From: Macrostomum lignano
Lineage: Eukaryota
Direction: 5' to 3'
NCBI GenBank assembly: GCA_002269645.1
Contig: NIVC01002582.1
Location: 95,748-159,747 of the forward strand
Length of the DNA: 64,000 bases
The notes beneath the pieces are model-generated. The model saw nothing but the letters and a program-made list of their open reading frames with translations, had not been told where the DNA came from and did not search any database. The stretch's first letter is position 1; each line of letters opens with the position of its first letter. Of the stretch, positions 1,456 to 56,000 are shown piece by piece. The position numbers were made by a program, and so were the translations under genes.

Positions 1456-1494
1456 ATCTCTATGCGCTTTACACTCAATGTTTGCCCCTTGCAG

Positions 1495-7315: not shown

Positions 7316-7832
7316 TGTCAGCCTCTCAGATCCTCAGTTGCTGGGCCAGCCTCCCAGATCCTCAGTTGCTGGGCCAGCCTCCCAGATCCTCAGTTGCTGG
7401 GCCAGCCTCCCAGATCCTCAGTTGCTGGGCCAGCCTCCCAGAGTGTCAGTTGCTGGGCCAGCCTCCCAGATTGTCAGTTGCTGGGCCAGCCTCCCAGATC
7501 CTCAGTTGCTGGGCCAGCCTCTCAGATCCTCAGTTGCTGGGTCAGCCTCCCAGATCCTCAGTTGCTGGGCCAGCCTCCCAGATCCTCAGTTGCTGGGCCA
7601 GCCTCCCAGAGTGTCAGTTGGTGGGCCAGCCTCCCAGATCCTCAGTTGCTGGGCCAGCCTCCCAGAGTGTCAGTTGCTGGGCCAGCCTTCCAGATCCTCA
7701 GTTGCTGGGCCAGCCCCAGATCCTCAGTTGCTGGGCCAGCCTCCCAGATCCTCAGTTGCTGGGCCAGCCTCCCAGATCCTCAGTTGCTGGGCCAGCCCCA
7801 GATCCTCAGTTGCTGGGCCAGCCCCAGATCCC
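7316..7832. repeat. Third array of the 28-bp minisatellite, between convergent TBCA and PKD2 3' ends
   Basis: Same unit and orientation as 1-1455. Confidence 0.95.
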
Positions 7833-18625: not shown

Positions 18626-19119
18626 TTTCTGTTCTCAAACGATTTCTAGAAACAGTCTTTTTACATTTCGGTTTGTTATAGTTGTCGATTATTTAATGTC
18701 ATTTTTTATCTAATAAATGTACTGTTGGCAAATACTAAATAAATAATTTTAAACGACAGTTGAGCACTATGCTGCACTATTATCTTATCCCCTAATGTTC
18801 TTAATACAAAAATCACATTAGAATGCTTGATACGATCTCCAAGCAGTCTGAGAATCCGTAAGATAAAGAAGTTCGAAGTTCACACAGCACGCCAAGTTGT
18901 TGTGCACAGCTTGTCTGTTGGCACTTTTGAGTTGACCTCAGTAGAAATGCTTTAAATAGCGTTGAAATTTAACGCTGTACTTTAACAAAACAACTTTCTC
19001 TTTGCAAGCTCAACTGTTGCTATCTTTGCCTAAAAACAAGGTCAGTCAAACGTTTGTCTGATTATTTACGTTTTATTTTATTGCAAACATTTTTTGTGCT
19101 ATTAGACCTTGGTAGATGT

Positions 19120-20627: not shown

Positions 20628-20722
20628 ACGCGCGTACAGAAGATTGTGTGACCTCCGTTACGTTTAACTTAGCATCAGTAAAAATTATTACAATACTCAA
20701 CTCGCCAGCTCAGACCGTCAGC

Positions 20723-23700
20723 ATGGCACTAGTCTACCAGATCAAGCTCCTAGCCAACATGCTGTCGCGAAAGAAGACTCTAGACGAAGCTCACATGGAA
20801 GAGACTCAACTAAATCGCTGCCTAACAACTCTCGACCTCACCGCACTGGGCGTCGGCTCGACCCTGGGCGCCGGTGTCTACGTGATCGCCGGAGAGGTCG
20901 CCCAGAAAGCCACCGGCCCAGCTGTGGTCGCGTCGTTCTTCATTGCGGCGTCTGCGTCAATCTTGGCTGGCCTGTGCTACGCAGAATTCGGCGCCAGAGT
21001 GCCCAAGTCGGGCTCCGCTTACGTCTACAGCTACGTGTCAGTTGGAGAACTGATGGCCTTCGTCATCGGCTGGAATCTCATCCTCGAGTACGTGATTGGA
21101 ACTGCAAGCGTTGCTCGGGCTTGGTCGCAGAACTTTGACAGCCTAGTTGGCGGCAAGATTATCGATTTCTTCAAGGACTACATGAGCATGTCGCTTCCTG
21201 GACTGGCCGATTATCCTGACCTGTTCGCACTGGGCATGGTGCTGCTTCTAACGGCTATCATTGCTATCGGGGTCAAGGAGTCCGCCTGGGTGACAAACAT
21301 CTTCACTTTCATCAACCTGATTGTACTGGCTGTTGTGTTCGTTGCGGGATGCTTCTTGTCCAGCTTTGCTAACTGGAGCATCCGACCGGACTTGAACGGC
21401 ACGGTTGTGTACCACAATGTCACGTACTCGGCCGATCAAGTTGGCGATGGCGCCTTTCTGCCGTTCGGTCTGCAGGGTGTTGTCTCCGGCGCTGGGACCT
21501 GCTTCTACGCGTTTGTGGGATTCGATGCGATTGCCACGACTGGAGAAGAGGTTCGTTAGTGAGTTCATTGAGTTGTTTTAATGAATGTTACATAGCTATG
21601 TACGCTAGCACACGATAGATCACACAGGGTGGACAGAAGCTTTGACTTTCTCATTGTCAGACAGGCATGTACACGCTCTGTGCATTGAGAGTTTAACCTC
21701 ATTGTTGAGAATCGTTAAAGCTTTGCGGGCGCCCCTGTCTCTTGGTTGGCGCCCCTGTCTCTTGGTGGGCGCCCCTGTCTCTTGGTGGGCGCCCCTGTCT
21801 CTTGGTGGGCGCCCCTGTCTCTTGGTGGGCGCCCCTGTCTCTTGGTGGGCGCCCCTGTCTCTTGGTGGGCGCCCCTGTCTCTTGGTTGGCGCCCCTGTCT
21901 CTTGGTGGGCGCCCCTGTCTCTTGGTGGGCGCCCCTGTCTCTTGGTTGGCGCCCCTGTCTCTTGGTTGGCGCCCCTGTCTCTTGGTTGGCGCCTCTGTCT
22001 CTTGGTGGGCGCCCCTGTCTCTTGGTGGGCGCCCCTGTCTCTTGGTGGGCGCCCCTGTCTCTTGGTGGGCGCCCCTGTCTCTTGGTTGGCACCCCTACTC
22101 CTGTGTCCTAGGCCTAGGCCGGTTGAAAGTTGGGATCCTGCCATTTGTTGAGTACCATCTGTCCATTAGTTTTTGAGCAAAACTTTTGTAGGGACGATTG
22201 GGGCTCCTCTGCGTACGCCACTGTACAATAGCCAGATGCAAAAAATCAAGAACTAAATTTTAAGTACTCTACTAAAATGTTAGTAGTAGAATACCAATAT
22301 TTTTTTAAAATCCGCTCTTGATTAATCTATTTATAGGTGAAAAATCCTCAACGAGCTATCCCAATCAGCATCATTTTGAGTCTGGCAATTTGCTTCGTAG
22401 CCTACTGCGGCGTCAGCTCCGTTCTCACCTTGATGCAGCCGTACTTCGCTCTGGACCCGTTTGCGCCCCTGCCTCAAGCGTTCGCCGCTCACGGTTGGCT
22501 TGTTGCCAACTATTTCATCGCTGTTGGCGCCATCTGCGCCCTGTCCACTAGCCTGCTGGGAGCCATGTTCCCCCTGCCCCGAGTGGTCTACGCCATGGCT
22601 AGCGATGGGTTGATCTTTCGCTTTCTATCTCGGGTTCATCCGCGTCTCGCTACTCCATTAATTGCCACCGTGCTGACGGGAGTCATGGCCGGCGTCATGG
22701 CATGCATGTTCGAGCTGAAAGCACTGGTTGACATGATGTCTATCGGTACACTACTAGCCTACACTCTTGTAGCCCTGTCTGTGCTCATACTTCGCGGTAG
22801 TTGCGACGTTTTCAACAATCGAGCAGTGTCTGCTCCGAGTGAGACCCCTAGTGGAGAGCAGCAGGTTCTGGAAGAGCCCGTTGTTGCAGCGACAAGCTCA
22901 ATGAAAACTGTACTGGTCGACGTTGAGGAAACCGACTTTGTTGAGCTCATTGAGTCTACCAGAGCAGATAAATTTACGCTTAAATCCTATCTGAGCTGCT
23001 CATTCCGTAGAGGTGGCTACTCTGAGCCGAACAATCTGACTGAACAGGTCACTCGAGTCAACTCCGGCTTATTTATGATCTCAGCAGGTGTGTTGGCATT
23101 CGTACTTGAGCGGATGCCTAACCAACTGGGAGCTGGCAGGCCAGAAGCAGTGATCCCGGCATCCATTGCCTGCCTACTGTGTCTGTTAGCCATGATCAGT
23201 TTGGCCATGCAGCCGCAGAGTCGAAAACCAGTGGCTTTTAAGGTAATGCTATTTCATATGTCTTAAAGTGGTAAAGAAATTTATAAAGGGTTGACCTGAT
23301 GCTCACAAATGCTATTCCTGTGTCGCTTTGTAGACCCTTTGTAAACCGCGGCCTTTTTAGAGGCAGGGGCCTGTGTGCACCCTGACGCACTTTAAACGAC
23401 ATTTTCGCACAACCGGCGTGAGGCATTGCTGCCCATTCCGCCGACTCCCCTGAGCAGACACAAAAGCGCGCGGATACGTACGCAGTCATACGCACAGGCA
23501 CACACTCACACAGGAGTGTACAGCAGCCCTAACTTTATTTATCGTTAGGCATGTACACTTCACTGTGCCTTGGGGGTTGGCCGTCAAGAGCGTTAATTGC
23601 ACGAGCAGAGCCAAGCCGAGATTAGCTAGCCCCAAATTAATCTGACTGCACATGGAATCGAACCTGGGCTGCTGGCTACAGCCCCTACGGAATCTTTGAC

Positions 23701-31109: not shown

Positions 31110-32320
31110 GATTGGCCCACTAAAATTGGCCCACTGATCGGCCACTTCGTGTCCCAAAAGCCCACTGAAAAAGCCCCCTTATTTTTACAAATCATGCTCA
31201 GCCCACTGCTCGGCCCATCTGACGGCCCACTGAAATAAAGCCCACTGATCGGCCCACTGACGGCCCACTGAAATGAAGCCCACTGACGGCCACTGAAATA
31301 AAGCCCACTGATCGGCCCACTGACGGCCCACTGAAATGAAGCCCACTTATCGGCCCACTGACGGCCCACTGAAATGAAGCCCACTTATCGGCCCACTGAC
31401 GGCCCACTGAAATGAAGCCCACTGATCGGCCCACTGACGGCCCACTGAAATGAAGCCCACTGACGGCCCACTGAAATAAAGCCCACTGATCGGCCCACTG
31501 ACGGCCCACTGAAATGAAGCCCACTTATCGGCCCACTGACGGCCCACTGAAATAAAGCCCACTTATCGGCCCACTGACGGCCCACTGAAATGAAGCCCAC
31601 TGATCGGCCCACTGACGGCCCACTGAAATGAAGCCCACTGACGGCCCACTGAAATAAAGCCCACTGATCGGCCCACTGACGGCCCACTGAAATGAAGCCC
31701 ACTTATCGGCCCACTGACGGCCCACTGAAATGAAGCCCACTTATCGGCCCACTGACGGCCCACTGAAATGAAGCCCACTGACGGCCCACTGAAATAAAGC
31801 CCACTGATCGGCCCACTGACGGCCCACTGAAATGAAGCCCACTTATCGGCCCACTGACGGCCCACTGAAATGAAGCCCACTTATCGGCCCACTGACGGCC
31901 CACTGAAATGAAGCCCACTGATCGGCCCACTGACGGCCCACTGAAATGAAGCCCACTGACGGCCCACTGAAATAAAGCCCACTGATCGGCCCACTGACGG
32001 CCCACTGAAATGAAGCCCACTTATCGGCCCACTGACGGCCCACTGAAATGAAGCCCACTTATCGGCCCACTGACGGCCCACTGAAATGAAGCCCACTGAC
32101 GGCCCACTGAAATAAAGCCACTGATCGGCCCACTGACGGCCCACTAAAATGAAGCCCACTGATCGGCCCACTGACGGCCCACTGAAATGAAGCCCACTGA
32201 CGGCCCACTGAAATAAAGCCCACTGATCGGCCCACTGACGGCCCACTGAAATGAAGCCCACTGATCGGCCCACTGAAATAAAGCCCACTGACGGCCCACT
32301 ATGTCGTCACGTCGGGAATA
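31110..32320. repeat. Modular GCCCACTG minisatellite (units of about 25-38 bp)
   Basis: Mixed modules CGGCCCACTGA / CGGCCCACTGAAATGAAGCCCACTGAT / ...AATAAAGCCCACT. Confidence 0.95.
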
Positions 32321-34235: not shown

Positions 34236-34662
<427 letters not shown>

Positions 34663-34859
34663 ATTCTGATTCTGATTGGCATAAACCAGTCACTGTTTAC
34701 TTATAAAATGTAGAAAGTGGTCTGAACATGACCACTGGTGTGTGCCGCATAACATGTGCCGCTGAGAAGCACAGTACGCTATTCTAGCAAACCTTGCTGA
34801 TAGTTAAAGTTACAGACTAGGGCTGGGCCTTGTCTTGTGCAAGCAGTATCAAATAAAGT

Positions 34860-35873: not shown

Positions 35874-38800
35874 TCAAAACTTTGGAAAGAAGAGCAGCTT
35901 TAATAGTGTAGATTTGTAGCACGGTATCTGCCGGTTACCAGTCTCATTGAGAACATCTGATGTCACCTTGGGCAGTAAATGTGTGAACTCTACTGGCGAA
36001 TCCGGACTGTCATCGCTGTAAGCCTCGAGAACTGAGTCTTTGAACTTTTGAATGAACACGGTACCTGTGTTGAGATTACGATCTGACTTGTCACACTCAA
36101 CGACGCTGTAGATATAAAGCGAGTCCTCATTCTTCCAGAAATTTTCAAGACCGTGGCAAACTCGGAGTGTTATCTCCCGTGGGACGTGACGACAGGCCTG
36201 TGTAATGAAAATCTTCGGTTTTCCTTTCAGCCATTGGTGAATTTGAATGGGCCCGAAAAGTTCGTCTAATTTGACTTCAGCTCCGTCTGACGAGTACACG
36301 GAGCCCAGGAAACCATGCGACATGATGCACAGCAAGAACGCAGTGCAATTTTTGTACTCGTCCTCCGTGAATAATATTCTCAGCTCTCTGACCTCATCGA
36401 AAAAGGCTCTGCCCACGTCTCGTAACAGATGATACTTAAAACCCAGCTTTTGCAGACTCAGGGGCAAGCAGTCGAGCTCATCGTCTCTCTCAGCCCCGAC
36501 GCGTGTTTGAAGTCGTGCAGGATCGTTAAATATGATATTGTTGATCACAATGGCCAATCGATCATCTGAGTTGCCAACGTCGTATCGTTGCCTTTGAGTA
36601 GCTGTCGCCCCACCAGAAGATGCTGAGCCACCCGCAGTTCCCTGCGCAGATCCGCCAGCAGAACCTCCAGCTGAGGCGCCAACACCACCTGCTGAGTTGT
36701 CCGGGTCCTCTGGATTTTCATGCTCCAAATAGACTTGGCCTTGATTGGTTTGATTCGGCAGCTGTCTAATGCTGAAAGTTTTCAAATTGTCGTAAATGTA
36801 CATTCAAATAAACTTTATTTTTGGCAAGTCTTATTTAAGCATCACAAAACTCACCACTCTCGAATAAAAGCTGCACACTCCCAATGCTTTCCCAGCTCGG
36901 CCCACTGCAGGCTTGTTCTCTTGTACTCTCCAACAACTTCCCAATCTTGTAGGCTATCGATGCGCTCACTCAGAACCTTCAAAACCTCCTGACAGCCCTG
37001 TCGAGCGGCCCAAATAACTGGTGTATTACCAAATCGATCAGCATGTCTGATGCTGGATCCGGAGTCAAGCAATATTTTCACCACTTTAGCGAAGTTTTTT
37101 TTCGCTGCATGCGTCAAAGCGGTGTAGCCAAGCCGATCCTGTAAAAATTGTTGTGTCTCCAGCTTGGTTGTGTATTTTAAGTGTGTAATTGCAATTTTCT
37201 CGTGAACTCACCTCGAGATTGAGATCTGCATCCATCTGTAGCAGCTCTGAAACTACTTCATCATGGCCAGAGTGAGCTGCGAGCATCAAAGGCGTCTGTC
37301 GCATGTTATCGGGCCTGTTCGTCTCAATCTGCAGTACGTTTTCGTCCAGAATTCGCCGAAACACTTTCACCGGTTGCAGGTGGCCGAGAAAGCTCGCCCA
37401 ACTCAGAGCGGATCTGCCTGATACGTCGCAAATCGAGGCGACTGCTGGGACCTTTTCTAATAGCTTCTCGACTATGTCGCTTCTGTTCTTCTTGGCAGCA
37501 ATTACCAGCAGCGTCTCCTTAAATGGCGGCAGCTGAATACTTAAGTCCGATGAGCTGTGAACGTGACGATTAAGATCTTCATCACTCCAATCTTGTGGTC
37601 TCCTGTAAAATGAACAAATGATGCTACAGAGATAATTGTAAAATGTACCTTTGATCCGTGTTATTTTCATTGAAAAAAATACTTTAGTCACTAACCTTCG
37701 TGCAGGTTTCGTCGTGTACTCATTCAGTACAAGGTTCTTTAGCTTATTTCTCAAACGTTCAACATTATCCCAGTCTCTTGTGTCGAATGCCAGACGATTT
37801 TCGGTTAGTATAGTTTCCATTTTGGCTAGACAGAACTGTACTTGCTCCTTAGAGCTACTGTAATGAGCGATGGTCATGTGCTCTTCAAAGTCAGGGTACT
37901 CCTGTAATTTCGAAAACCAGGCATCAAGTTCGCTGTTTGTAGCTCCTAACAGCTCGGCTCTCAGGCTCCACGCGAGGCAGCAGAAGTTCACGTACAGATG
38001 AGAGCTTCCTGTCCTGGATTTTCGAATAACAAGCAGGTTTCTGGTAAATTCTGGCAGGCATGAGAAATTCACAACTTCTGAAGGACAGGGAAGACAGAAT
38101 CGCCATGCCCAATCTGTGCCCTGAAACACTTGATGCATATTTTCGATTTGATCTGGCTTCCAGCTTCTCATCACCGTGTGGTTGTCAAGTCCTTTCAGAA
38201 CTTTTTTTGCGGCTTCGAAGTCTTCAACTTTATATAGCAGTAGAATATTCAAACAAGCTGCTGTAGTCTTGCACCAAGTCAGATTCTCTAGAGGTTTTAA
38301 GAGTGCCATGGCATCACCAGCCTTGTCCGAAAACAGTTCAAAGTAGCTACGAACCACATCGTACAGCTTTCCGAATGTAGAGACGGTGATTTCTGAGTTT
38401 CCTTCAGTCTGCAACGGGTTCAAGGCTTGCAGTGGAACCATTGTGAATGGATGAAAATAGAAATTTTCATTCTGCAGTGGCTTCAGCTGGTGCTGCAGCT
38501 TTTGTACGACAGCTTCGGCTAGGTTAGTTGTGCGAAGTCGCTTGAGCTGGTCTCGAACCCTCGATTTCGTTTGCTGAAAGTCGCCACCGACACCAGCATT
38601 GGCAAAGTACAGAGGGCTGTCCGGGAGAAAAAAACTCGGCATACATATGTCCGGATCGGGACCTGAGTCGATGAACTCGAGTAGTTTATCGAGCGACTCG
38701 TTTAAAAGCCGAATTAAGTTATCTGGCCTCCAAATTTGTTCATCAAAACCGTGCTCATGAAGTAAGTAAAGCAGCAATGTCTTGGCGTGGTACGTCTTGA

Positions 38801-41577
38801 GACCCGCTGTAGCGACTTGACCAGAGACAAGTCTATTGAGTACGAACTTCATGAGGATGTAAAGTTGACCTTGACAATCAGTTAAACTCCTCATGATGGC
38901 TTTTTCCAGAAAGCTGAAGCTAATCCGAAGTTCGTGGTCAGCAGTGGGTCTGGCTGCTCGAACCAGATGCAAAGGCAGTGCGTTTGCTTCAAAGCAGCCA
39001 CGCATAACTGTCTGCTCAGCAATCGAGTTGGAGCAGCAGGGATTGGCAAAGCAGAAGCTCTCAGCCGGCTTGGAGCCGCATTCTGCAGCAGTCATAGCTG
39101 GTTCACTTCCTGGAAGAGTTTTAAAATACACAGCGCGTCACTACATGTAGTTAGTAAAATATAACATAACAATTAATTCAAGTCAAATTTACTCGTTCTC
39201 AGTGGCCTTACCAATCATAGCATCCACTTGAACATAACCTTGTTTAACTTCAAATCTGGTTTTCTTCACCGCTTTGCAGCTGCATCCATTGAGTAAGTGC
39301 ACTGGCTCTCGAGGCCCGACAAGACATGTCCAATTAATGTCACAATCATCCGACGCTTGGCCATTTAGCTGGGTCAGACTGGAACCCCATCCCTCAGCGA
39401 AGCTTCCTACTACGTGAATGCCTTCATTGTTCTCGTGAATTTGCCTGACGATATCCTCCATCGAGTCCGCCATTTTTTGCTGCAGTTTAGCTCTCTGCCA
39501 AGTAAATCCAGCTTCTTTCAGCAGCTTGTGAAGAGCAATGCTTTTTGAGGCGTCAGCTTCCAGGCTAAAACAGAGGAAGTTGTTGATCTGACACAGTAAA
39601 AACTATAAGGCATTGATTATTTACAAATAAAGCAAGCTCTGCAATGGGGCAGTTTGGGTCGCGGAATCGGCTTTGAGATCAATTCTGAAGCTCTGAAAAT
39701 TGTAAATACTTTTTGCGAATTTGAATGGCAGAATAGTCCCATCTGGAGAATCTAAGAACCTAAATTTGACCTATATATAAATGTTAACTAGCTAGTGCAC
39801 CGATCGATATGTGCTCGTACCTACCTATACGGCTCACCATATTAGGCCGAGCACTTACATGCAGTGATGCAGATAATAAAATAACTGATTACACCTGCCC
39901 TAATGGGCAGATGTGCAACCGACAGCTCAGCCGCAGCTATTGCGCGGAGCATCTGAAGCCTGCGTACGGCTGTTCAGTCCAAGGACTGGGGGGGGGGGGG
40001 GGTCGCCACACACACACCCTCAATTGCCCCAGCTAATGCTGGCACCCATTTTGATTAGAGCGTCTGACTCAGAAAGGATCTGAAAGGTCGGGGTTTCGAT
40101 TCTCGACCCACTTTGAAAATTTTGTCCTTGAGCAAGACACTACTCTGCATCGCTTTAGTCGACTCAGCTTTTCAGCTGTCGCAGAACAATAGAAAACATT
40201 GTTTTACCACACTTACGGCTGCTCCAACGAAAGGTAGGATGTATCCAAGCCTCTGTACTTTAAGTATTCGCTGAAATATAGTTAGCTCACGGGTACAACG
40301 CGAAGTTTTTGGAATTTTAAAATTTAACAACAATTCACATAAAAAGTCCAACGCAGTTACCCATCAAGCAGTCGCACGATTTGATAATGTCCGAACTTCT
40401 CGGCCAACTGTATGCTGGTATCCTTGTCTTTGTGCAGTGCATTCGCACCGTGGTCAAGCAGCACTTTTGCCGCTCTAACCTGGCCTGTCATGCAAGCCCG
40501 AGTGAGAGCCGTTCTGCCATCATCATCTGTGACGCTGTCAAGGGAGACTTCTATTTCCAGTAGGTGTTGGATTAGTCTGTGCTGGCCAGCATCTGCAGCA
40601 AGCATCAGCAAGTCGCACAGCGGTGCTCTGTCCTCGTTTTCTTCTAAAACCTTTTCCAGCAGAGCTTTCGACGTTTCTATGAGGCCGCCTGATACGCAGC
40701 GAGCCAAAATCTTCCAGGCGTCCGATGAAGATTCAAATTTTTTACTTTTCAAAGTTGCTTTTAACGCTGAGTTGCCGCCAGTAATAATTGTTTTCTCTAG
40801 CAAGTTGAGATCAATGCTCTTAACCTTTTCAATCCTAACAGGTGCTGCTTGGTAAGCAGGTGCGTTCTGCCTGGTAGAGCGCTCAATCGTAAGCTTAATA
40901 GCTAATGATAAACAGCGAAAACTGCAGTTTAGCACTGAAAAATCTCTTTTCGATGCAAAATCAGAAAAATTGTCCGAATCCAGAGGATCAATGTAATCTA
41001 TGATCACTTTTTCATCACTAGAGACATCGAATTCGGTTCGGTCAACGATTGTCTTGCCTTGCGTCTGCTGAAAAAAAACCTCGAATAAATATTTGTTACT
41101 GACTGGACTAACCTGCGACTGGAACTTTTTAAGTAGGTAAATTTGGCGTCGGATACATCCCGTAAACAAAAAAAAACATTTAACCATGTTACCAACGTCA
41201 TGGCTTTCTACTTTAAAACGTGTTTTTTCGCGGTTGTTTTCAAATTCAATAAACTTTTCTATTTCAAAGTCGTGTTCGGACGCTCCAATTATGCCGTAGT
41301 TTAAGGCGAAAGCAGGTTGAACCATATATAGGTATTCACTTGAGATTTCGTTTAACTCAGTTGACGCAATTCTAAATCTTTTTTCTTTCTCTTCTTCTTT
41401 GTCTTTTCTTTCCTTGTCTTTTTGAAACTCCATGCAACATTTGGAAAGTTCTTTCATCACATGCTCTAAAACGCATGCTTCATGCCATAACTCTTTTGTT
41501 TGAAAATCTTTGAATTTCCAGGCTTTCGACCCCGGTCTGCGATAGAATTCTTGCTTTGAAACGATTTCACGGCCCAT
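35874..41577 (-). CDS. Multidomain protein, about 1518 aa: alpha-kinase-like region, ANK x3, Mab-21/cGAS-like nucleotidyltransferase (cGLR), helical region, ANK x6, Gly/Ser linker, caspase (C14)
   Basis: Exons 40361-41577 (donor GTAACT, phase 2), 39212-39564 (GTAAGG, phase 1), 37696-39109 (GTTAGT, phase 2), 37212-37602 (GTGAGT, phase 0), 36855-37138 (GTGAGT, phase 2), 35874-36771; total 4557 nt, no stops. Mab-21 motifs: GSFAEGW, ELRISFSFLEK, LKTYHAKTLLL, CMPSFFLP. Caspase motifs: LAIVINN, R-V-G-A-E-R-D, IMSHG, GKPKIFITQACR, SDRNLNTGTVFIQ, QIP. Further 5' exons are possible (acceptor TTATTTGCAG just upstream of the ATG). Confidence 0.85.
39900..40170. mobile_element. SINE family A with its 5' half inverted, in intron 1 of the cGLR-caspase gene
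   Basis: 39900-40052 is the 3' body in - orientation. 40053-40170 is the head plus CORE-like part in + orientation (GGTTTCGATTCTCGACCC...TGTCCTTGAGCAAGACAC). Confidence 0.75.
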
Positions 41578-42083
41578 GGTGTTGCTATAAACTGCAAATA
41601 AAATAGCTCCGCTCGTACATTCAAAGCTTGTATTGTTGCAAAAGAGCTCAGGAGGCTAAATATCCACCTAAAAGCAGAAATCATGAATGTAGCTTTGCAT
41701 CAACTCGGTTTTTAGTCAAGTTTTAATATACCTTTTGCGCCCTAATTATCAGGTTATTTTCTTGATTCAACTTGGTGCGTGGCGGGAGGTCAGGCGGAGC
41801 AAAAGTTATCAAGATTTGTTAGTATGTTTTGGCCATAGAGAAACAATTAGTAAATGAAACATTCCTCGGTGGGTGGACACTTTCTCTGTTGCTGAGTACA
41901 GATGAGTTATATCTGCTCAACAGTAAAAATTTGATCCCTAGACTAGGGGCAACAGTTATCTTGATTGTAGCGTTCTGCCACTCTAGATTAATTCGACAGC
42001 TCCTACGCTCGTAAGCCCGGAGGGGTAAAAAGCCATATTTAAAATAGCAAATTGAACTAAATCCTAGATATGTCTGCCAAAGG

Positions 42084-50000: not shown

Positions 50001-53000
50001 TCGACGAGTAGATCGGTACGGTCGCGAACTCGAATCTCTGCAACAGGAGCGCCTGGCCCAAGTGGAGCAGCTCCGACAGTTGCACGTGGAAATTTCCAGC
50101 GTAAGCAATGACTCTATTTGTACTAGTAAGCTGCGCTTCGCTTGAAACTCGTACAAATATGCTTCTCTGTCTTTGGGGAAATTTTTCTCAGGTCAATATA
50201 TTTTCAAATTTGATATAATCGCCCACAAAGTCACAGAATCGTTCACAGAAACCCCATATAACATAGAATCGCACACAGACCCATATAATCGCCAACAGAA
50301 CCATAGAATCGCCCACAGAACCATAGAATCGCCCACAGAACCATAGAATCGCCCACAGAACCATAGATTCGCCCACAGAACCATAGAATCGCCAACAGAA
50401 CCATAGAATCGCCAACAGAACCATAGAATCGCCCACAGAACCATAGAATCGCCCACAGAACGATAGAATCACCCACAGAACCATAGAATCGCCAACAGAA
50501 CCATAGAATCGCCAACAGAACCATAGAATCGCCCACAGAACCATAGAATCGCCCACAGAACGATAGAATCACCCACAGAACCATAGAATCGCCAACAGAA
50601 CCATAGAATCACCACAAAACCATAGAATCGCACACAGACCCATAAAATCGCCAACAGAACCATAGAATCGCACACAGACCCATAGAATCGCCAACAGAAC
50701 CATAGAATCGCCAACAGACCCATAGAATCGCCAACAGAACCATAGAATCGCCCACAGAACGATGGAATCACCCACAGAACCATAGAATCACCCACAGAAC
50801 CATAGAATCGCCAACAGAACCATAGAATTGCCCACAGAACCATAGAATCACCACAAAACCATAGAATCGCACACAGACCCATAGAATCGCCAACAGAACC
50901 ATAGAATCGCCAACAGAACCATAGAATCGCCCACAGAACCATAGAATCGCCCACAGAACGATAGAATCGCCCACAGAACCATAGAATCGCCAACAGAACC
51001 ATAGAATCGCCCACAGAACCATAGAATCGCCAACAGAACCATAGAATCGCCCACAGAACCATAGAATCGCCCACAGAACGATAGAATCACCCACAGAACC
51101 ATAGAATCGCCAACAGAACCATAGAATCGCCCACAGAACCATAGAATCGCCCACAGAACCATAGAATCGCCCACAGAACGATAGAATCACCCACAGAACG
51201 ATAGAATCGCCCACAGAACCATAGAATCACCCACAGAACCATAGAATCACGACAGAACTATAGAATTACCCACAGAACGATAGAATCGCCCACGGAACCA
51301 TAGAATCGTCCACAGAACCATAGAATCGCCCACAGAACGATAGAATCGCCCACAGAACCATAGAATCACCCACAGAACCATAGAATCGCCCGCAGAACCA
51401 TAGAATCGCCCACAGAACGATAGAATCACCCACAGAACCATAGAATCGCCCACATAACCATAGAATCGCCCACAGACCCATAGAATCGCCCACAGAACCA
51501 TAGAATCGCCCACAGAACGATAGAATCACCCACAGAACCATAGAATCGCCCACAGAACCATAGAATCGCCCACAGAACAATAGAATCGCCCCTGAAGCTC
51601 CATATCGGATAACCAAAACAATTATCATGGTCACGTAGAATCATTGCTTCCGTTTCAGCGAGCGGTTGACATTTCAATTATAATTCTACAATTATATTGG
51701 AGACTTGCTTCGTTGCTAAAACACATTCACTTCCATATAGCCTGCATATGAAGATTACGTAATCCATTAGCACTTGGTGCTGCTTGAAGTTCCATGTTCA
51801 ATCTTTTTAAGCACCCATCTAGCGATACAGATCTATCTCTTATTCTGCATCTTCCCTTGACATATTTCGTGCTGGTCAGTAAGGGCTATCATGTCTAGAA
51901 ATTTGAAGATTTTTTCAAAGCATCAACATTTTTGTTGTCTTCTTTTGCAACATGTCAATCGGAAGAGATGTTAGTGTTTGTCAGTAGAAACAAAAAACAT
52001 TTGCTGTTTCTGCAGAAAAGGAGAAGAGAGATCAGATACAGAAATCTCCAGTGCCCCAAACTCTTTGACCCCTGAACTGAACTGATGGGAGCTGTGTGCA
52101 TGGAATATCTCACAAGCCCAAAACTTCATATAGGCTTTGTACGGAATTTCCCATTTTCAAAAAACTCTTGCTTACTAATTCCGCTAGCTTAACAACTTAA
52201 ACTAATTTGACAATGTGAAGAATCGAGCTTGTGAAGAATCGAGTCTGTGACGAATCGAGCTTGTGATGAATCGAGCTTGTGAAGAATCGAGCTTGTGAAG
52301 AATCGAGCTTGTGAAGAATCGAGCTTGTGAAGAATCGAGCTTGTGAAGAATGGAGCTTGTGAGGAATCGAGCTTGTGAAGAATCGAGTCTGTGAAGAATG
52401 GAGCTTGTGAAGGATCGAGCTTGTGAAGAATCGAGTCTGTGAAGAATCGAGCTTGTGAAGAATCGAGCTTGTGAAAAATCGAGTTTGTGAAGAATCGAGC
52501 TTGTGAAGAATCGAGCTTGTGAAGAATCGAGCTTGTGAAGAATGGAGCTTGTGAGGAATCGAGCTTGTGAAGAATCGAGTCTGTGAAGAATCGAGTCTGT
52601 GAAGAATCGAGCTTGTGAAGAATGGAGCTTGTGAAGGATCGAGCTTGTGAAGAATCGAGCTTGTGAAGAATCGAGTCTGTGACGAATCGAGCTTGTTAAA
52701 AATCGAGCTTGTGAAGAATCGAGTCTGTGAAGAATGGAGCTTGTGAAGAATCGAGCTTGTGAAGAACCGAGTCTGTGAAGAATCGAGATTGTGAAGAACC
52801 GAGCTTGTGACGAATCGAGCTTGTGAAGAATCGAGCTTGTGAGGAATCGAGCTTGTGAAGAATCGAGTCTGTGAAGAATCGAGCTTGTGAAGAATCGAGC
52901 TTGTGAAGAATCGAGCTTGTGAAGAATGGAGCTTGTGAGGAATCGAGCTTGTAAAGAATCGAGTCTGTGACGAATCGAGCTTGTTAAAAATCGAGCTTGT

Positions 53001-56000
53001 GAAGAATCGAGTCTGTGAAGAATGGAGCTTGTGAAGAATCGAGCTTGTGAAGAACCGAGTCTGTGAAGAATCGAGATTGTGAAGAACCGAGCTTGTGACG
53101 AATCGAGCTTGTGAAGAATCGAGCTTGTGAAGAATCGAGCTTGTGAAGAATCGAGCTTGTGAGGAATCGAGCTTGTGAAGAATCGAGTCTGTGAAGAATC
53201 GAGCTTGTGAAGAATCGAGCTTGTGAAGAATCGAGCTTGTGAAGAATGGAGCTTGTGAGGAATCGAGCTTGTAAAGAATCGAGTCTGTGAAGAATCGAGC
53301 TTGTGAAGAATCGAGTCTGTGAAGAATGGAGTCTGTGAAGAATCGAGTCTGTGAAGAATCGAGCTTGTGAAGAATGGAGCTTGTGAAGATTCGAGTCTGT
53401 GAAGAATCGAGCTTGTGAAGAATCGAGCTTGTGAAGAACTGAGCTTGTGAAGTTTCGAGCTTCGAACTTTTCTGTCTTCCTCTGAAAACAAGATCTTTCA
53501 AGATGGCTTGGAAGAATGAAAGAAGGGTCGCATGATTCCGAAGCCATTTGAACTGAGAGGCAGAAACTTAAGGAAGCGATTTAAAAGATAAGAAGATATA
53601 CATGTGTCTAACAAAAATGACTACTTTATTAAAACGCTAAAAATTGTATTGTTCCAATTATTTTATACATTTTAAGACCCGGAAAATCTAGTCAATAACT
53701 CTATTAGCAATAATTTGAATTCGATTTCTGCCGATCAATATCGATAGCTGATATTGCTAAGAGTAAGGATTGCTGGGAGTTCACACCACCTGCCGTGTTT
53801 GCCCAATTAGTGTCAATAACCAATCAGAGATGCTAAGAGTTTGCACAGTTCAGTTCAGTAAGAAGTGTCTACACTGTGTAGTTGTGTCAGTCATTTTTCT
53901 CTCACCACGCTGTTCCTCATTTCTCCAGTTCCCCTCCAGCTCCCCTTTCTCCAGATCTTCATCTCATTATTTAATAGTGAAATTTTTGCTAGCAATTTCT
54001 AGCTATAGTTTTTAACGATCTGTTTAAACAGGTCAACTTTGACAGTGAGCAAGTATTGTTTCAAGAGCTCAACTCACTCAGGTCCATATTGTAGACAGAA
54101 CGAGGAGTGGGAGAAAAGAGGGGAGAGGTCCAGAATCTCTTCTTCATCATCGTTTCAGACTCCTATTATACGGTAAATCCCATTAGAAAGCTGAATCGTT
54201 TAATCAGGTTGAGAGAAGGCTTGAGTCGGCGGTATAAGCTTGGTTTACGCTGTGTCAACACGTTCTGGGGAGTTCCGAAGAGAGTCAGTCAGTCTCAAGT
54301 CTGAAAGGGTTTTTGAAGCGATATTGAGAAAGTGACTGATGATCTCCAGTCTTTGAGTTCTGTATAAGCAATAGAAACCCCCTTGAAGCTCGCTTTACAC
54401 ACATATTAGTGCCTGAGTGCAGGGATTGGCATCTTCAGTTTCATTCTTGACCCACTGCGATCGAGGCCCTATACGTATATGCGCATGGAGGTCTTTGGGA
54501 AAAATATAGCAAACAGACCAGCAACTTGGCTTTTATACTTGGCGGTGCCTGACCGTTGAAATTGGGAGGCGGCGGGCCCGAGAAAGTATGGAGAAAAGCT
54601 GGACAAACAAGGCAATCCGAGAGTTCTAAGCCAGCCGACGGTTCCCCGAAAATCCCCAAAAAACAAAGGTGTTTCGGTTTGGGGGAGGACTGCAATAATA
54701 AACACCTATAAGACAGGGATGCAGGCTTGAGGATCAAATTGTTTGCACACTCCTGCGCAGTGTGGGTGTCCGGCTAAACCTTATCGAATAGATTTTTTTC
54801 TCTTGGCAAAAAATGGCTAATTTTTTTTCTTGTGCGGAAAATAGCGGAGAATGCCGAGAGCCGCGTGAATAGGAGATGTCAGCTGTCTGTCACGATCGCT
54901 GGCCAAATGTAAAAAAGAAGAATTCGATTCCCAAAGTCTGGCAAACTTGCAATGCGGTCTTTGAATTCCTCAGCAACTTAGGTGGCCGGTTTTCCGTCTG
55001 CTGGTCTGAGGAATGCTGCAAGAGGGTTGGACAACTCTCGATGGTTTTCTAAAATTGTGCATAATATGCATCTATTGTTTGTTTATATTGTTTTGATAAC
55101 TACGAGTATTGAATTACATGTATATAGGATGTTAAAACAGGCTGAAGACAGAAAGAGTATTGAGTGAGATATGGAGAGACTACTGAGTGAGATACGGAGT
55201 GCTGAGTGAGATATGGAGAGAGTGCTGAGTGAGATATGTAGAGAGTGCTGAGTGAGATATGGAGAGAGCATTGAGTGAGATGGAGAGAGTGCTGAGTGAG
55301 ATATGGAGAGAGCATTGAGTGAGATGGAGAGAGTGCTGAGTGAGATATGGAGAGAGCGTTGAGTGAGATATGGAGAAGATATGGAGAGAGTGTTGAGTGA
55401 GATAGAGAGATTAGTAAGTCATAATTCGTTATCCGTTGATATTACGCAATGTAATTTTAACAAGCCGTGTCCTGTCCCCACAGCTGGAATCCAACTTGAA
55501 GCGCTCCGAAAGCGAACAGTCCCGCGAGTTGCAACGCCTCCGCTGCCTGTTGGACACCTACGGCCTGTTGCTAGGTCAGGTGAATCGACTGCGAATGAAA
55601 TGCGGCCTCGAGCCTCTGCAGGACTTTCGGAACACTGGCGGACTCAATGTCGAGTGAGTTGATGCATGCCACACCATGGGATTATCTGGAGCCCCCTAGG
55701 GGGGTTTGATTGCTAGTCTAATTGACTAAAATATTGAAATTCAAGTAGGAACCGGTTTAAATGCAGCAATAAAGTTTGAGTTCGATTTCAGTTAAGAAGT
55801 TTTTTACGAGCCGTAGCATTAAATTAATTTTTTATTAAGCTATTTTCTTTATTATATGCAAAAAGTGCAACCAAAGACAGTAACGGAAGCAAGCAAAGTT
55901 CCTAATGTACTTTTATATGTGAAGTCTTATAGCTCGAAACGTGGATATTTTTCGACCGAGTAAAAATCCCCAGTCAAATCTTTTCGAAATCCGTTTAGAC

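What the first reader, a model, noticed from the sequence alone, without database searches (positions are those of the whole stretch)
35874..41577. cGAS-like receptor (Mab-21) fused to ankyrins and a caspase in one predicted ~1518-aa chain
Seen: five ORFs that look separate in the track join through five GT-AG introns with matching phases at every junction, giving alpha-kinase-like, ANK x3, Mab-21 NTase fold, helical, ANK x6, GS linker, caspase. Established: animal cGLRs (cGAS, Drosophila cGLR1/2) make cyclic dinucleotides and signal through a separate receptor such as STING. Bacterial CBASS pairs CD-NTases with separate death effectors, and initiator caspases normally use CARD or DED prodomains. 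Inference: sensor and protease are linked in one protein, so ligand-driven oligomerisation of the Mab-21 module could activate the caspase directly, as a STING-independent immune or cell-death switch. I do not recall this architecture being described, but I could not search.
Basis: partly seen in the sequence, partly recalled or inferred. Interest (0 to 1): 0.93.

Follow-up and report, generated by a model that had tools for sequence, protein, structure and literature searches.

The report
Flatworm cGAS-like–ankyrin–caspase fusion gene
A flatworm (Macrostomum lignano) gene really does encode one long protein that joins a cGAS-like sensor fold, ankyrin repeats and a caspase. The architecture is transcript-supported and conserved in paralogs but undescribed in the papers I could search, and the cGAS-like part has probably lost its enzyme activity.

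Summary
The gene model is real. Six minus-strand exons (41577-35874) joined by five GT-AG introns give a 1518-aa chain. Its order is: variable N-terminus, ANK x3, cGAS/Mab-21-like NTase fold, family-specific helical domain, ANK x6, G/S/A linker, caspase. The organism is Macrostomum lignano. Two ~94-97% identical copies (PAA80948.1, PAA59752.1) and a diverged paralog (PAA93319.1, 2111 aa) are deposited as RNA-seq-derived gene models with the same junctions. In the paralog the ANK-to-caspase intron sits at the same codon and phase. The cGAS-like fold is confirmed by profile and by structure; the caspase keeps its His/Cys dyad. "Alpha-kinase-like" is unsupported: the first ~245 aa are hypervariable and match nothing. 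The caspase-fused cGLR modules have lost family-conserved catalytic Asp residues (N483, S541), so they are probably pseudo-enzymes. ANK-linker-caspase is a shared cassette that also follows a kinase head, a type already described as sister to the platyhelminth 'ANK caspases'. I found no paper describing a cGLR-caspase fusion. Best reading: a single-chain sensor-protease switch working by induced proximity, without a nucleotide messenger. That mechanism is inferred, not shown.

The parts
40843..41577 (-). Exon 1, 5' part: start codon and hypervariable N-terminal region (aa 1-245). No recognisable domain; not alpha-kinase.
   Evidence: No Pfam or PDB hit. AF2 pLDDT <50. Against homeolog L001: 87-aa indel, ~45% aa identity, dS 0.43, omega 0.77, and all 8 gap runs are multiples of 3.
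40361..40842 (-). Exon 1, 3' part: degenerate plus 3 canonical ankyrin repeats (aa 246-405). Ends in phase 2 at donor GG|GTAACT.
   Evidence: Pfam Ank_2 at aa 324-404, E 3.6e-14. Homologous to the ANK block that precedes the NTase core in all paralogs. Nearly identical in the homeolog.
39565..40360 (-). Intron 1 (796 nt, GT..AG). Contains a poly-C tract and repeat-like sequence.
   Evidence: The junction RLLDG|LEADASK is also used in deposited model P0001. 82% identity with many non-3n indels against L001.
39212..39564 (-). Exon 2: NTase N-lobe of the cGAS/Mab-21-like fold. G459-S460 activation-loop motif (VVGS). D479-C-D481-I-N483-W, with the N483 codon at 39333-39335.
   Evidence: GS and D481 are invariant in the family. 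N483 replaces an Asp conserved in 16/16 caspase-less paralogs. 95% nt identity and no indels against L001.
39110..39211 (-). Intron 2 (102 nt, GT..AG, phase 1).
   Evidence: The junction is identical in P0001, P0026 and P0176.
38535..39109 (-). Exon 3, 5' part: rest of the NTase core and the Mab-21 C-terminal helix bundle (to aa ~715). Includes S541 (codon 39057-39059) at the family's third-Asp position, and the signatures LRISFSFLEK, GLKTYHAKT and MPSFFLPDSPLYF.
   Evidence: Pfam Mab-21_C. Profile A2 against PDB: cGAS 8e-6, cGLR1 2e-3. AF2 plus Foldseek: top 50 all cGAS/MB21D2/MAB21L1. Motif table.
37696..38534 (-). Exon 3, 3' part: family-specific, mostly helical domain (aa 716-994; DWAWRFCLPC, LPEFT, HLYVNF..L.WSL.AELL). 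Fold and function unknown.
   Evidence: Conserved in all paralogs. No PDB or Pfam relative. omega 0.48.
37603..37695 (-). Intron 3 (93 nt, GT..AG, in frame, no stop). Lies inside the single 681-aa ORF 37086-39131.
   Evidence: Spliced out in the transcript-based models P0026 and P0176 (KPAR/TR|RPQDW). 6-nt indel against L001.
37212..37602 (-). Exon 4: first part of the C-terminal ANK x6 block.
   Evidence: Pfam ANK. 98.7% identity, no indels. Contiguous ORF with the Mab-21/helical region, so this link needs no splicing.
37139..37211 (-). Intron 4 (73 nt, GT..AG, phase 0). Splicing restores an ANK repeat (..DADLNLE|DRLGYTALTHAA..).
   Evidence: The same junction is in P0026 and P0176. A phase-0 intron sits at the homologous position in paralog locus L002.
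36855..37138 (-). Exon 5: last ANK repeats. Ends ..CAAFIRE + TG| (phase 2) at donor GTGAGT.
   Evidence: Pfam ANK. 98.6% identity, no indels.
36772..36854 (-). Intron 5 (83 nt, GT..AG): the critical ANK-to-caspase junction. It splits a Cys codon as TG|C.
   Evidence: GC 0.28, like the other short introns. 1-nt indel, and its AATAAA is not conserved in L001. The same join FIRE-C-IRQL is in P0026 and P0176. Same codon and phase in paralog P0033/L002 (IRT-C-IRK, 340-nt intron).
36579..36771 (-). Exon 6, 5' part: ~65-aa low-complexity G/S/A-rich linker (aa 1220-1284).
   Evidence: Composition. An equivalent G/S/P-rich linker is present in P0033, P0027 and P0029.
35874..36578 (-). Exon 6, 3' part: caspase p20/p10 domain (aa 1285-1518) and stop codon. 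Catalytic H1372 (codon 36315-36317, CIMSHG) and C1413 (codon 36192-36194, QACRH). S1-pocket R1310, Q1411, R1451.
   Evidence: Pfam Peptidase_C14 95 bits. Caspase-3 1.3e-13 with aligned motifs. Dyad conserved in all relatives. omega 0.62, no indels.

Best explanation
**What it is.** This is one copy (of at least three near-identical loci) of a Macrostomum lignano gene encoding a 1518-aa single-chain protein. In this protein a cGAS-like-receptor-derived module is joined through six ankyrin repeats and a flexible G/S/A linker to a catalytically intact caspase. The module consists of the NTase/Mab-21 fold plus a family-specific helical domain, preceded by ANK x3 and a hypervariable N-terminus.

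**Shown.**
- The gene structure.
- The domain identities.
- Transcript-level support in sister copies.
- Conservation of the fusion and of its intron in a diverged paralog.
- Purifying selection on all modules.

**Inferred.**
- The cGLR module has lost family-conserved catalytic aspartates (N483, S541). It therefore most likely acts as a ligand- or partner-binding pseudo-enzyme, not as a cyclic-nucleotide synthase.
- Binding of its (unknown) ligand drives self-association, as ligand binding does for cGAS.
- Self-association brings the C-terminal caspase domains together and activates them by induced-proximity dimerisation. The long pro-region plays the role that CARD or DED pro-domains plus adaptor platforms play for initiator caspases.
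- The output would be proteolysis leading to cell death or signalling, with no nucleotide second messenger or STING step.
- The ANK x6 block may hold the caspase in an autoinhibited state or recruit substrates.

**Wider family.** The protein belongs to a wider flatworm set of 'variable head - ANK x6 - linker - caspase' proteins with Mab-21, protein-kinase or other heads.

**Confidence breakdown.**
- One real fusion gene with these domains: about 0.9.
- Inactive NTase: about 0.7.
- Induced-proximity sensor-protease mechanism: about 0.4-0.5.
For: **Gene model.** The model is reproduced. E3 and E4 form one uninterrupted ORF.

**Independent models.**
- PAA59752.1 and PAA80948.1 are 94-97% identical to the window protein outside the N-terminus and use the same E2-E6 junctions.
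- PAA93319.1 has the same domain order.
- These GenBank models derive from a genome-guided RNA-seq transcriptome, with boundaries cut at experimental SL and poly(A) sites (PMC5730564).

**Comparison with the homeolog and paralog.**
- Exons have 0 indels, introns have indels, and the AATAAA in intron 5 is not conserved.
- omega is 0.37-0.62 for every module.
- The ANK/caspase intron is at an identical codon and phase in paralog locus L002.

**Domain identities.**
- cGAS fold.
- Caspase dyad and S1 pocket.

**Degenerate NTase site.** The substitutions are found specifically in the caspase-fused proteins, while 16/16 caspase-less paralogs keep [DE]SDID and 15/16 keep the downstream Asp at the spacing Li et al. 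define for the third acid.

**Context.**
- The paralogs end right after the helical domain, so ANK x6 + caspase is an added cassette.
- The same cassette follows a kinase head in P0027 and P0029.
- Flatworms are reported to have lost FADD/DED-caspase activators (PMC11463336) and, for Schistosoma, cGAS/STING (PMC4117786).
- Induced-proximity activation of long-prodomain caspases and ligand-induced cGAS oligomerisation are established knowledge, not tested here.
Against: - No functional data of any kind, and no ligand known.
- No transcript evidence for this particular copy. The window's own caspase exon is in no protein record.
- Which of the three tandem Asp positions are catalytic could not be fixed structurally. 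D479/D481 (DCDI) formally satisfies [DE]h[DE]h, and a formal h[DE]h (FEA) exists at X=81, so residual NTase activity is not excluded.
- omega of 0.46-0.62 is fairly relaxed and rests on few substitutions.
- The NJ tree does not place the caspase-fused proteins as a clean clade.
- Caspase-3 is the best PDB match, so an effector-like, cleavage-dependent activation mode is possible.
- The gene neighbourhood gives no immune context.
Confidence: 0.5

Rival explanations
1. Active cGLR with an appended protease. The NTase still makes a nucleotide signal, using D479/D481 and another acid such as D520, E540 or E562. It signals in trans, to a STING-like or other receptor, or in cis. The caspase is then an additional or nucleotide-regulated output, conceptually like bacterial cyclic-oligonucleotide-activated caspase-like proteases.
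For: - The GS motif and a formal [DE]h[DE]h (DCDI) are present.
- A formal h[DE]h lies within X50-90.
- The fold is complete across both lobes.
- The NTase core is under purifying selection (omega 0.39).
- Li et al. accepted other M. lignano ANK-cGLRs as having complete active sites.
Against: - The two Asp positions conserved across the caspase-less family (16/16 at the DSDID position, 15/16 at the downstream site) are N and S here.
- In the second caspase-fused paralog three of the four conserved acids are gone (TNDINW, QQTT).
- The three caspase-fused accessions are absent from the parts of Li et al.'s tables that are held.
- No recognisable nucleotide-receptor domain (STING, SAVED, CARF) is in the chain.
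Confidence: 0.15
2. Non-immune initiator caspase. The protein is a lineage-specific member of the flatworm ANK-caspase group used in developmental, germline or tissue-turnover apoptosis. The Mab-21-like pseudo-enzyme is only a protein-protein scaffold or localisation module, as in MAB21L1/2 or MiD49/51 (my knowledge), and does not sense any pathogen-derived ligand.
For: - Degenerate catalytic site.
- ANK caspases are proposed as the flatworm replacement for lost DED-caspase pathways (PMC11463336).
- Mab21L-type proteins have developmental roles (PMC9980059).
- No immune genes nearby.
Against: - The family shows a lineage-specific expansion (at least 25 paralogs).
- The N-terminus is hypervariable and weakly constrained.
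- Head modules are swapped on a common effector cassette.
- These features are more typical of immune-receptor repertoires than of core developmental genes. This is suggestive only.
Confidence: 0.25
3. Two genes, not one. An ANK-Mab-21-ANK gene ends at TGA 36851-36853 and is polyadenylated after the AATAAA at 36819-36824. A separate caspase gene starts at ATG 36803 (MYIYDNLKTFSIRQL...). The fusion would then be a read-through or assembly artefact.
For: - ORF 35874-36803 has its own ATG, and an AATAAA lies in the 83-nt gap.
- M. lignano has polycistronic, trans-spliced transcription units (PMC5730564).
- No protein record contains the window's own caspase exon.
Against: - The transcript-derived models of two sister copies and of a diverged paralog all splice across this gap. 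The annotation pipeline cuts units at experimentally detected SL and poly(A) sites.
- The intron position and phase are identical in the paralog despite 39% caspase identity and a 340-nt versus 83-nt intron.
- The AATAAA is AAAAAA in the homeolog.
- The only strong acceptor (36772) lies downstream of ATG 36803. After it there is no in-frame Met until inside the catalytic SHG motif.
- The 32 nt from the ATG to the acceptor have intron-like GC of 0.28.
Confidence: 0.04
4. Functionless recent duplicate. The window copy, or the whole caspase-fused subfamily, is drifting after the recent genome duplication, and the intact ORF merely reflects its youth.
For: - omega is about 0.46-0.62 on small counts.
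- NTase catalytic residues are lost.
- The N-terminus is nearly neutral (omega 0.77).
- The region is repeat-rich.
Against: - Three near-identical copies all keep a 1100-1518-aa ORF with no frameshift or stop.
- There are 0 indels in 3340 nt of exon while introns have indels.
- The diverged paralog keeps the same architecture, intron and caspase dyad.
- dN<dS in every module.
Confidence: 0.06

Closest known systems
Platyhelminth 'ANK caspases' and the M. lignano protein-kinase-prodomain caspase (Krasovec et al. 2024, PMC11463336; first noted in Schistosoma, Lee et al. 2014 as cited there)
   Same: - A caspase with ankyrin repeats immediately N-terminal in place of CARD/DED.
- Flatworm-specific.
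- The nearest relatives of this caspase domain are the kinase-headed M. lignano proteins P0027 and P0029 (33-34% identity). They share the ANK x6 - G/S/P linker - caspase cassette.
   Different: - Here the pro-region additionally carries a cGAS/Mab-21-like fold, a helical domain, ANK x3 and a variable N-terminus.
- That paper reports ANK caspases as restricted to parasitic flatworms.
- It states that no other unusual pro-domain caspase was detected in platyhelminths, so this architecture was missed.
- Phylogenetic placement within or beside the ANK-caspase clade was not tested here.
ANK-fused cGAS-like receptors, including M. lignano PAA86972.1 and PAA45980.1 (Li et al. 2023, PMC9980059)
   Same: - Same protein family as the core here: ANK repeats followed by a cGLR NTase fold with GS..D.D motifs.
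- These M. lignano members were curated as cGLRs and cloned for the biochemical screen.
   Different: - Those proteins end after the core or helical region and have no protease.
- They keep the DxDxD and downstream Asp.
- The window protein adds ANK x6 + caspase and has N483/S541 at those positions.
- No CASc or caspase entry appears in the held part of their fused-domain table.
cGLRs fused to death-fold adaptor domains: Stylophora cGLR-death domain (PMC9980059) and oyster HEPN-Ig-DED-TRADD-N-cGAS-like-TPR (XP_011454060.1; Kaur et al. 2021, PMC8195603)
   Same: A cGAS-like module is physically coupled in cis to the cell-death machinery in an invertebrate with lineage-specific expansions.
   Different: There the coupling is through an adaptor domain (DD or DED) that would recruit a separate caspase. 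Here the protease itself is in the same chain and no death-fold domain is detected.
Initiator caspases activated by induced proximity (caspase-8/-9/-2, Dronc; established knowledge)
   Same: - A long non-catalytic pro-region N-terminal to a p20/p10 protease.
- Intact dyad and Asp-binding pocket residues.
- The proposed activation logic is the same.
   Different: - No CARD or DED.
- The oligomerisation platform and sensor would be built into the same polypeptide.
- The best PDB sequence matches are effector caspases-3/-6/-7.
- The activation mode is untested.
Catalytically inactive Mab-21-fold proteins (MAB21L1/2; MiD49/MiD51 - my knowledge; MAB21L1 noted as lacking a predicted functional active site in PMC9980059)
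   Same: cGAS-like fold retained with a degenerate catalytic site and used for binding or scaffolding. MAB21L1 and MB21D2 are among the Foldseek hits.
   Different: No close sequence relationship (profile E 0.5 to MAB21L1, against 8e-6 to cGAS). None of those is fused to a protease.
Bacterial CD-NTase/CBASS and type III CRISPR systems with caspase-like (CHAT/C14-type) protease effectors (my knowledge, not checked here)
   Same: The general theme of pairing a cGAS-family nucleotidyltransferase or sensor with a caspase-like protease as the output.
   Different: - In bacteria these are separate proteins linked by a diffusible cyclic oligonucleotide and a SAVED/CARF receptor domain.
- Here there is one chain, no receptor domain, probably no messenger, and a true animal caspase.
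- No evidence of direct descent.

Membership tests
Mab-21 / cGAS-like NTase fold superfamily | Bilobed fold: Pol-beta-type NTase core plus C-terminal helix bundle, with detectable homology across both lobes | tested here: met
   - Pfam Mab-21_C is marginal.
- Family profile A2 hits only cGAS (8e-6), cGLR1 (2e-3) and MAB21L1 (0.5) in PDB.
- The AF2 model (pTM 0.79) gives 50/50 top Foldseek hits to cGAS/MB21D2/MAB21L1, with about 350-430 aligned columns and target TM about 0.5-0.57.
Predicted catalytically competent cGLR (criteria of Li et al. 2023) | Active-site motif h[QT]GS X8-20 [DE]h[DE]h X50-90 h[DE]h | tested here: not met
- The window protein has VVGS (no Q/T). DCDI formally fits [DE]h[DE]h.
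- The family's conserved DIDW pair reads DINW (N483). The family's conserved third Asp (QDT, X about 57) is S541.
- The only strict h[DE]h in range is a non-conserved FEA.
- The register of the catalytic pair could not be verified structurally, so residual activity is not excluded.
Predicted catalytically competent cGLR (criteria of Li et al. 2023) | Synthesis of a nucleotide second messenger on ligand binding | not testable with these tools
   Needs a biochemical assay of recombinant protein.
Caspase (peptidase family C14A) | Peptidase_C14 p20/p10 domain with the catalytic His (SHG) and Cys (QACxG) dyad | tested here: met
   - Pfam PF00656 scores 95 bits against a cutoff of 21.4.
- Caspase-3 matches at 1.3e-13 with CIMSHG and QACRH aligned to SHG and QACRG.
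- The last motif residue is H, not G.
- The dyad is conserved in all 8 relatives checked.
Caspase (peptidase family C14A) | S1 pocket residues for Asp specificity (caspase-3 R64, Q161, R207; numbering from my knowledge) | tested here: met
   R1310, Q1411 and R1451 align with them in the caspase-3 alignment (coordinates).
Caspase (peptidase family C14A) | Asp-directed proteolytic activity | not testable with these tools
   Needs an enzyme assay, with a C1413A control.
Platyhelminth ANK caspases (Krasovec et al. 2024) | Ankyrin-repeat pro-domain directly preceding the caspase domain | tested here: met
   ANK x6 (aa about 1027-1215), then a 65-aa linker, then the caspase.
Platyhelminth ANK caspases (Krasovec et al. 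2024) | Phylogenetic placement inside the monophyletic ANK-caspase clade | not tested
   - No tree was built with the published ANK caspases.
- The closest caspase domains are the kinase-headed M. lignano proteins.
- A kinase-prodomain M. lignano caspase, apparently of that type, is placed in that paper as sister to the ANK clade.
Alpha-kinase | Alpha_kinase catalytic domain (Pfam PF02816) or structural equivalent in aa 1-300 | tested here: not met
   - No Pfam hit at E<=1 anywhere in the chain.
- No PDB sequence hit at E<=10.
- The AF2 model has pLDDT 42.
- The region is not conserved even between 95%-identical homeologs.

The most novel reading that the evidence does not exclude
The caspase-fused proteins are single-chain pattern-recognition or guard receptors. 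A cGLR that has given up nucleotide signalling senses a nucleic acid or other danger ligand and switches on its own caspase by self-association. Together with the kinase-headed and other-headed ANK-caspases, they would form a modular, flatworm-specific innate-immune and cell-death receptor repertoire. That repertoire would replace STING, FADD/DED-caspase and inflammasome-type wiring. It would be an animal example of a cGAS-family sensor hard-wired to a death protease.
Probability: 0.3. Interest if true: 0.85.

Novelty: new variant of a known kind. Interest (0 to 1): 0.64.

Why it matters
**How it differs from known cGLRs.** cGAS-like receptors are thought to act through diffusible nucleotide messengers and a separate receptor. 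Li et al. report that 87% of them carry no appended signalling domain. The fusions described so far are to binding repeats or death-fold adaptors.

**What this gene would represent.** A conserved, transcript-supported fusion of a cGLR-derived module to a caspase suggests another way of wiring this sensor family. The sensor would couple directly to a protease and could afford to lose catalysis.

**Evolutionary context.**
- It revises the picture of flatworm caspases. ANK caspases were reported only in parasitic species, and no other unusual pro-domain caspase was reported in platyhelminths.
- It shows that one effector cassette has been combined with different head modules.

**Testability.** M. 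lignano has RNAi and transgenesis, so the hypothesis can be tested directly.

Tried and rejected
**Searches that led nowhere or misled.**
1. The whole-chain PDB search and the untrimmed family profile were swamped by ankyrin hits. I replaced them with trimmed queries.
2. Word-index homolog searches with ANK+linker+caspase and with the caspase alone found nothing. Exact look-ups of the caspase ORF and of P0021 also failed. For a while this suggested the caspase exon had never been annotated. The exhaustive HMMER search overturned that and found PAA59752.1, PAA80948.1 and PAA93319.1.
3. The N-lobe-only profile against PDB gave no NTase hit, so the catalytic register could not be fixed by alignment.
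4. The N-terminal structure prediction was too poor (pLDDT 42) for a fold search. I did not run one.
5. The helical-domain profile had no PDB or Pfam relative.
6. I looked for a tRNA-derived SINE in intron 1. ARAGORN found nothing in the window.

**Hypotheses considered and rejected.**
- A separate caspase gene from ATG 36803, with AATAAA-directed 3' end formation. The evidence against it is given under the rival explanations.
- 'VQVDAM' D520 as the third catalytic acid. The spacing (X=37) is outside the 50-90 range and the position is variable in the paralogs.
- Another copy of the gene or of the caspase in the window. There is none.

Full report

The region 35874-41577 contains five minus-strand ORFs. 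Reading the minus strand and splicing explicitly gives six exons:
- 41577-40361
- 39564-39212
- 39109-37696
- 37602-37212
- 37138-36855
- 36771-35874

They are separated by five GT..AG introns of 796, 102, 93, 73 and 83 nt. Each has a pyrimidine-rich acceptor (TTTTAG, TTCCAG, TTACAG, TTACAG, TTTCAG) and the phases are compatible. Exons have GC 0.42-0.50 and the four short introns 0.28-0.36. Exons 3 and 4 lie in one uninterrupted 681-aa ORF, so the link between the Mab-21 region and the first C-terminal ankyrin repeats needs no splicing at all.

**2. What are the modules?**

Pfam on the whole chain gives ankyrin repeats at aa 324-404 and about 1027-1215. It gives Peptidase_C14 at aa 1291-1513 (95 bits) and a marginal Mab-21_C at aa 624-688.

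*The caspase.*
- The caspase domain matches caspase-3 at E 1.3e-13.
- CIMSHG and QACRH align to the catalytic motifs.
- R1310, Q1411 and R1451 align to the Asp-binding pocket residues.

*The cGAS-like core.*
- The Mab-21 claim needed more work, because the core alone has no PDB sequence hit.
- A homolog search identified the organism as Macrostomum lignano and returned 25 paralogs with ANK plus Mab-21_C.
- Their alignment shows cGAS-type signatures: LR[IV]SFSF.EK.IM, GLKTYHAKT, W.P.NL and MPHFF.PD.PLYF.
- A trimmed family profile hits only cGAS (8e-6), cGLR1 (2e-3 to 4e-3) and weakly MAB21L1 in PDB.
- An AlphaFold2 model of aa 406-994 (pTM 0.79, pLDDT 74) has cGAS, MB21D2 or MAB21L1 as all 50 best Foldseek PDB matches (E from 5e-6).
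- The cGAS-like fold is therefore established.

*The other modules.*
- The roughly 280-aa helical domain after the core is conserved in all paralogs but matches nothing known.
- The linker (aa 1220-1284) is G/S/A-rich.
- The 'alpha-kinase-like' label for the N-terminus is not supported. There is no Pfam hit at E<=1, no PDB hit at E<=10, and the AF2 model has pLDDT 42.

**3. Is it one gene?**

The weak point was the E5 to E6 junction.
- *Case for two genes.* The caspase ORF has its own ATG (36803) inside the putative intron. The upstream ORF stops one codon after the donor. An AATAAA lies in the gap. None of the 25 paralogs carries a caspase; they all end just after the helical domain.
- *Misleading negatives.* Word-index searches found no protein containing the caspase exon.
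- *The exhaustive search.* An exhaustive HMMER search with the caspase domain found P0026, which is 94% identical, is 1099 aa long and has the caspase at its C-terminus. It also found several long relatives.

*The deposited models.*
- P0026 is PAA59752.1.
- Its cluster mate P0176 is PAA80948.1 (1444 aa, full length).
- P0033 is PAA93319.1 (2111 aa).
- All three are from the Mlig_3_7 annotation.
- P0026 and P0176 use exactly my junctions: KPA[RT]R|RPQDW, DADLNLE|DRLGY and CAAFIRE-C-IRQL.

*How those models were made.* According to the genome paper, these GenBank models are TransDecoder ORFs on a genome-guided RNA-seq assembly (StringTie/TACO). Its units are cut at experimentally detected trans-splice and poly(A) sites (PMC5730564). 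The junctions therefore have transcript-level support in sister copies.

*Comparison with homeolog locus L001.*
- Exons 2-6 are 95-99% identical with zero indels in 3340 nt.
- Introns 1, 3 and 5 carry indels, including a 1-nt indel in intron 5.
- The AATAAA is AAAAAA in L001.

*Comparison with the diverged paralog locus L002.*
- The ANK to caspase intron splits the same Cys codon TG|C (IRT-C-IRK against IRE-C-IRQ), although it is 340 nt long instead of 83.
- The phase-0 intron inside the ANK block is also conserved.

*Conclusion.*
- After the acceptor at 36772 there is no in-frame Met until the catalytic SHG motif, so that acceptor only makes sense when cis-spliced.
- I consider the two-gene rival essentially excluded for the family. 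It remains untested only for this individual copy.
- The window copy is a third locus. It is 94% identical to P0026 and about 90% overall to P0176, while those two are 97% identical to each other.

**4. Selection**

All values are for the window against L001.

| Module | dN/dS |
|---|---|
| NTase core | 0.39 |
| Helical domain | 0.48 |
| ANK x6 | 0.37 |
| Linker | 0.35 |
| Caspase | 0.62 |
| All | 0.46 |

The counts are small, but every module has dN<dS and all copies keep intact frames.

The first ~245 aa behave differently:
- an 87-aa indel
- about 45% aa identity
- dS 0.43 against 0.03-0.09 elsewhere
- omega 0.77
- all eight gap runs are still multiples of three

This points to a hypervariable coding segment with a separate history.

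**5. The cGLR module is probably a pseudo-enzyme**

Li et al. define putatively active cGLRs by h[QT]GS X8-20 [DE]h[DE]h X50-90 h[DE]h.

In the 16 caspase-less paralogs I aligned:
- all have [DE]-S-D-I-D-[WFY]
- 15 have an Asp about 57 residues later (QDT, LDT, QDL or MDY)
- 14 have hTGS

The caspase-fused proteins differ at exactly these positions:
- The window, P0176 and P0026 read VVGS/LVGS ... D-C-D-[IM]-N-W ... A-E-S-F.
- P0033 reads LIGS ... T-N-D-I-N-W ... Q-Q-T-T.

By analogy with cGAS (EFDVMF) and OAS1 (DADLVVF), which I take from my own knowledge, the catalytic pair is most likely the D-I-D immediately before the hydrophobic strand. N483 and S541 would then remove two of the three carboxylates.

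I could not verify the register structurally. DCDI formally satisfies the motif, so I rate inactivity at about 0.7. The core is still under purifying selection, which implies a retained non-catalytic role. Li et al.'s tables include other M. lignano ANK-cGLRs (PAA86972.1, PAA45980.1 and others) but, in the parts held, not the three caspase-fused accessions.

**6. Wider family**

*Nearest relatives of the caspase.*
- P0027 and P0029: M. lignano proteins of 1072-1073 aa, with a protein kinase, a second degenerate caspase-like stretch, ANK x6, a G/S/P linker and a caspase.
- P0031 and P0028: other head or fragment, then ANK, then caspase.
- P0033: the second Mab-21 version.

*Census and branching.*
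- Among 53 long caspase-bearing hits, only the M. lignano proteins combine Mab-21_C with a caspase. ANK x6 - linker - caspase is thus a shared cassette placed behind different heads.
- An NJ tree of the cores places the two caspase-fused lineages as successive early branches below the large caspase-less clade. It is not decisive about a single origin.
- The conserved intron argues for one origin of the fusion.

**7. Comparison with what is known**

- Krasovec et al. 2024 (PMC11463336) describe platyhelminth 'ANK caspases', reported as restricted to parasitic species. They note one M. lignano caspase with a kinase-like pro-domain as sister to that clade. They state that no other unusual pro-domain caspase was detected in platyhelminths, and that FADD and DED-caspase components are lost.
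- Li et al. 2023 (PMC9980059) report that 87% of cGLRs are stand-alone. Some are fused to TPR, ANK, further cGLR domains or, in a coral, death domains. Their fused-domain table has no CASc or caspase entry in the held, alphabetically sorted part. [quoted passage not shown]
- Kaur et al. 2021 (PMC8195603) describe an oyster DED-TRADD-N protein with a cGAS-like domain.
- Wu et al. 2014 (PMC4117786) report loss of cGAS and STING in flatworms, based on Schistosoma.
- Further full-text searches for a cGLR or Mab-21 fusion with a caspase found nothing.

The architecture is therefore deposited but, as far as I can search, undescribed. I rate it a new variant that combines two known kinds, ANK-cGLRs and ANK caspases.

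**8. Mechanism**

*Shown.*
- One chain.
- A cGAS-like fold with a degenerate active site.
- An intact caspase.
- A flexible linker.
- Conservation of the arrangement.

*Inferred.*
- The cGLR-derived module, with its helical domain and perhaps the variable N-terminus, binds a ligand or partner.
- Binding promotes self-association.
- The tethered caspases are activated by induced proximity.
- The ANK x6 block acts as an autoinhibitory or substrate-recruiting element.
- No nucleotide messenger or STING is needed.

*Rivals.* An active cGLR with an appended protease (0.15), a non-immune scaffolded initiator caspase (0.25), two genes (0.04), and a drifting duplicate (0.06).

*What was not tested.*
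- Nothing here tests the ligand, oligomerisation or protease activation.

**9. Verdict**

- It is a real and interesting lineage-specific architecture. It is not categorically new and has no functional evidence yet.

Noticed in passing
window 40843-41577 (aa 1-245) vs L001 6001-6500: Mosaic divergence between homeologous copies. The N-terminal ~245 aa have dS 0.43, omega 0.77 and an 87-aa in-frame indel, while the rest of the gene has dS 0.02-0.09. This suggests gene conversion of the 3' part or swapping or diversification of the 5' module.
   Followed up: partly
P0027 / P0029 (PAA89054.1, A0A1I8GZ94); not in the window: Kinase-headed relatives contain two Peptidase_C14 stretches. The internal one is degenerate (e.g. 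FFVQTHRD, with no catalytic Cys motif). It is followed by ANK x6, a linker and an intact caspase, a possible built-in pseudo-caspase partner.
   Followed up: no
P0002 (UniRef M. lignano model, 1036 aa): This model carries a second cGLR core at its C-terminus (..IGSYSEGWGNSLTTLDGRTDSNSDIDVMC..). It is either a tandem multi-cGLR protein, as Li et al. describe, or two adjacent genes merged by prediction.
   Followed up: no
window 34236-34663: A perfect (GGCA)x107 microsatellite lies about 1.2 kb downstream of the gene's stop codon. It creates three spurious 163-171-aa ORFs.
   Followed up: no
window 1-1458, 2181-2732, 3216-4211, 4858-6032, 7319-7831, 12729-13277, 13997-14632, 17283-18634, 19115-20628, 31200-32300, 50262-51591, 52214-53462: The window is packed with long minisatellite arrays (periods 10-178 nt, up to 100 copies). 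The same 28-mer array recurs at 1-1458, 2181-2732 and 7319-7831. Most long ORFs outside the genes are repeat artefacts.
   Followed up: partly
window 10233-11330 (-), 20588-23266 (+), 56319-56981 (+), 58644-59573 (+): Neighbouring coding pieces are a polycystin-type cation channel exon (PKD_channel 3e-77), two amino-acid permease exons, a zf-C4H2 protein exon and a reverse-transcriptase fragment. There is no immune-gene cluster around the fusion gene.
   Followed up: partly
window 39990-40010 (intron 1): A run of about 15 C (minus strand) flanked by repeat-like sequence sits inside the 796-nt first intron. ARAGORN finds no tRNA-like element anywhere in the window.
   Followed up: partly
window 41595-41603 (upstream of the ATG at 41577): An acceptor-like TTTGCAG lies 18 nt upstream of the start codon. 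It could be a spliced-leader trans-splice site, which is common in M. lignano. The homeolog's CDS starts at the same ATG.
   Followed up: no
method (vs 53): The word-index homolog search missed PAA59752.1, PAA80948.1 and PAA93319.1 even though they are 94-97% identical to the query. The exhaustive HMMER search found them. Negative results from the word-index tool should not be read as absence.
   Followed up: yes
L002 1303-3126 and 18252-20307: The diverged paralog PAA93319.1 is flanked by a CABIT-domain gene and an ERO1 gene. As in the window, there is no obvious immune neighbourhood.
   Followed up: no
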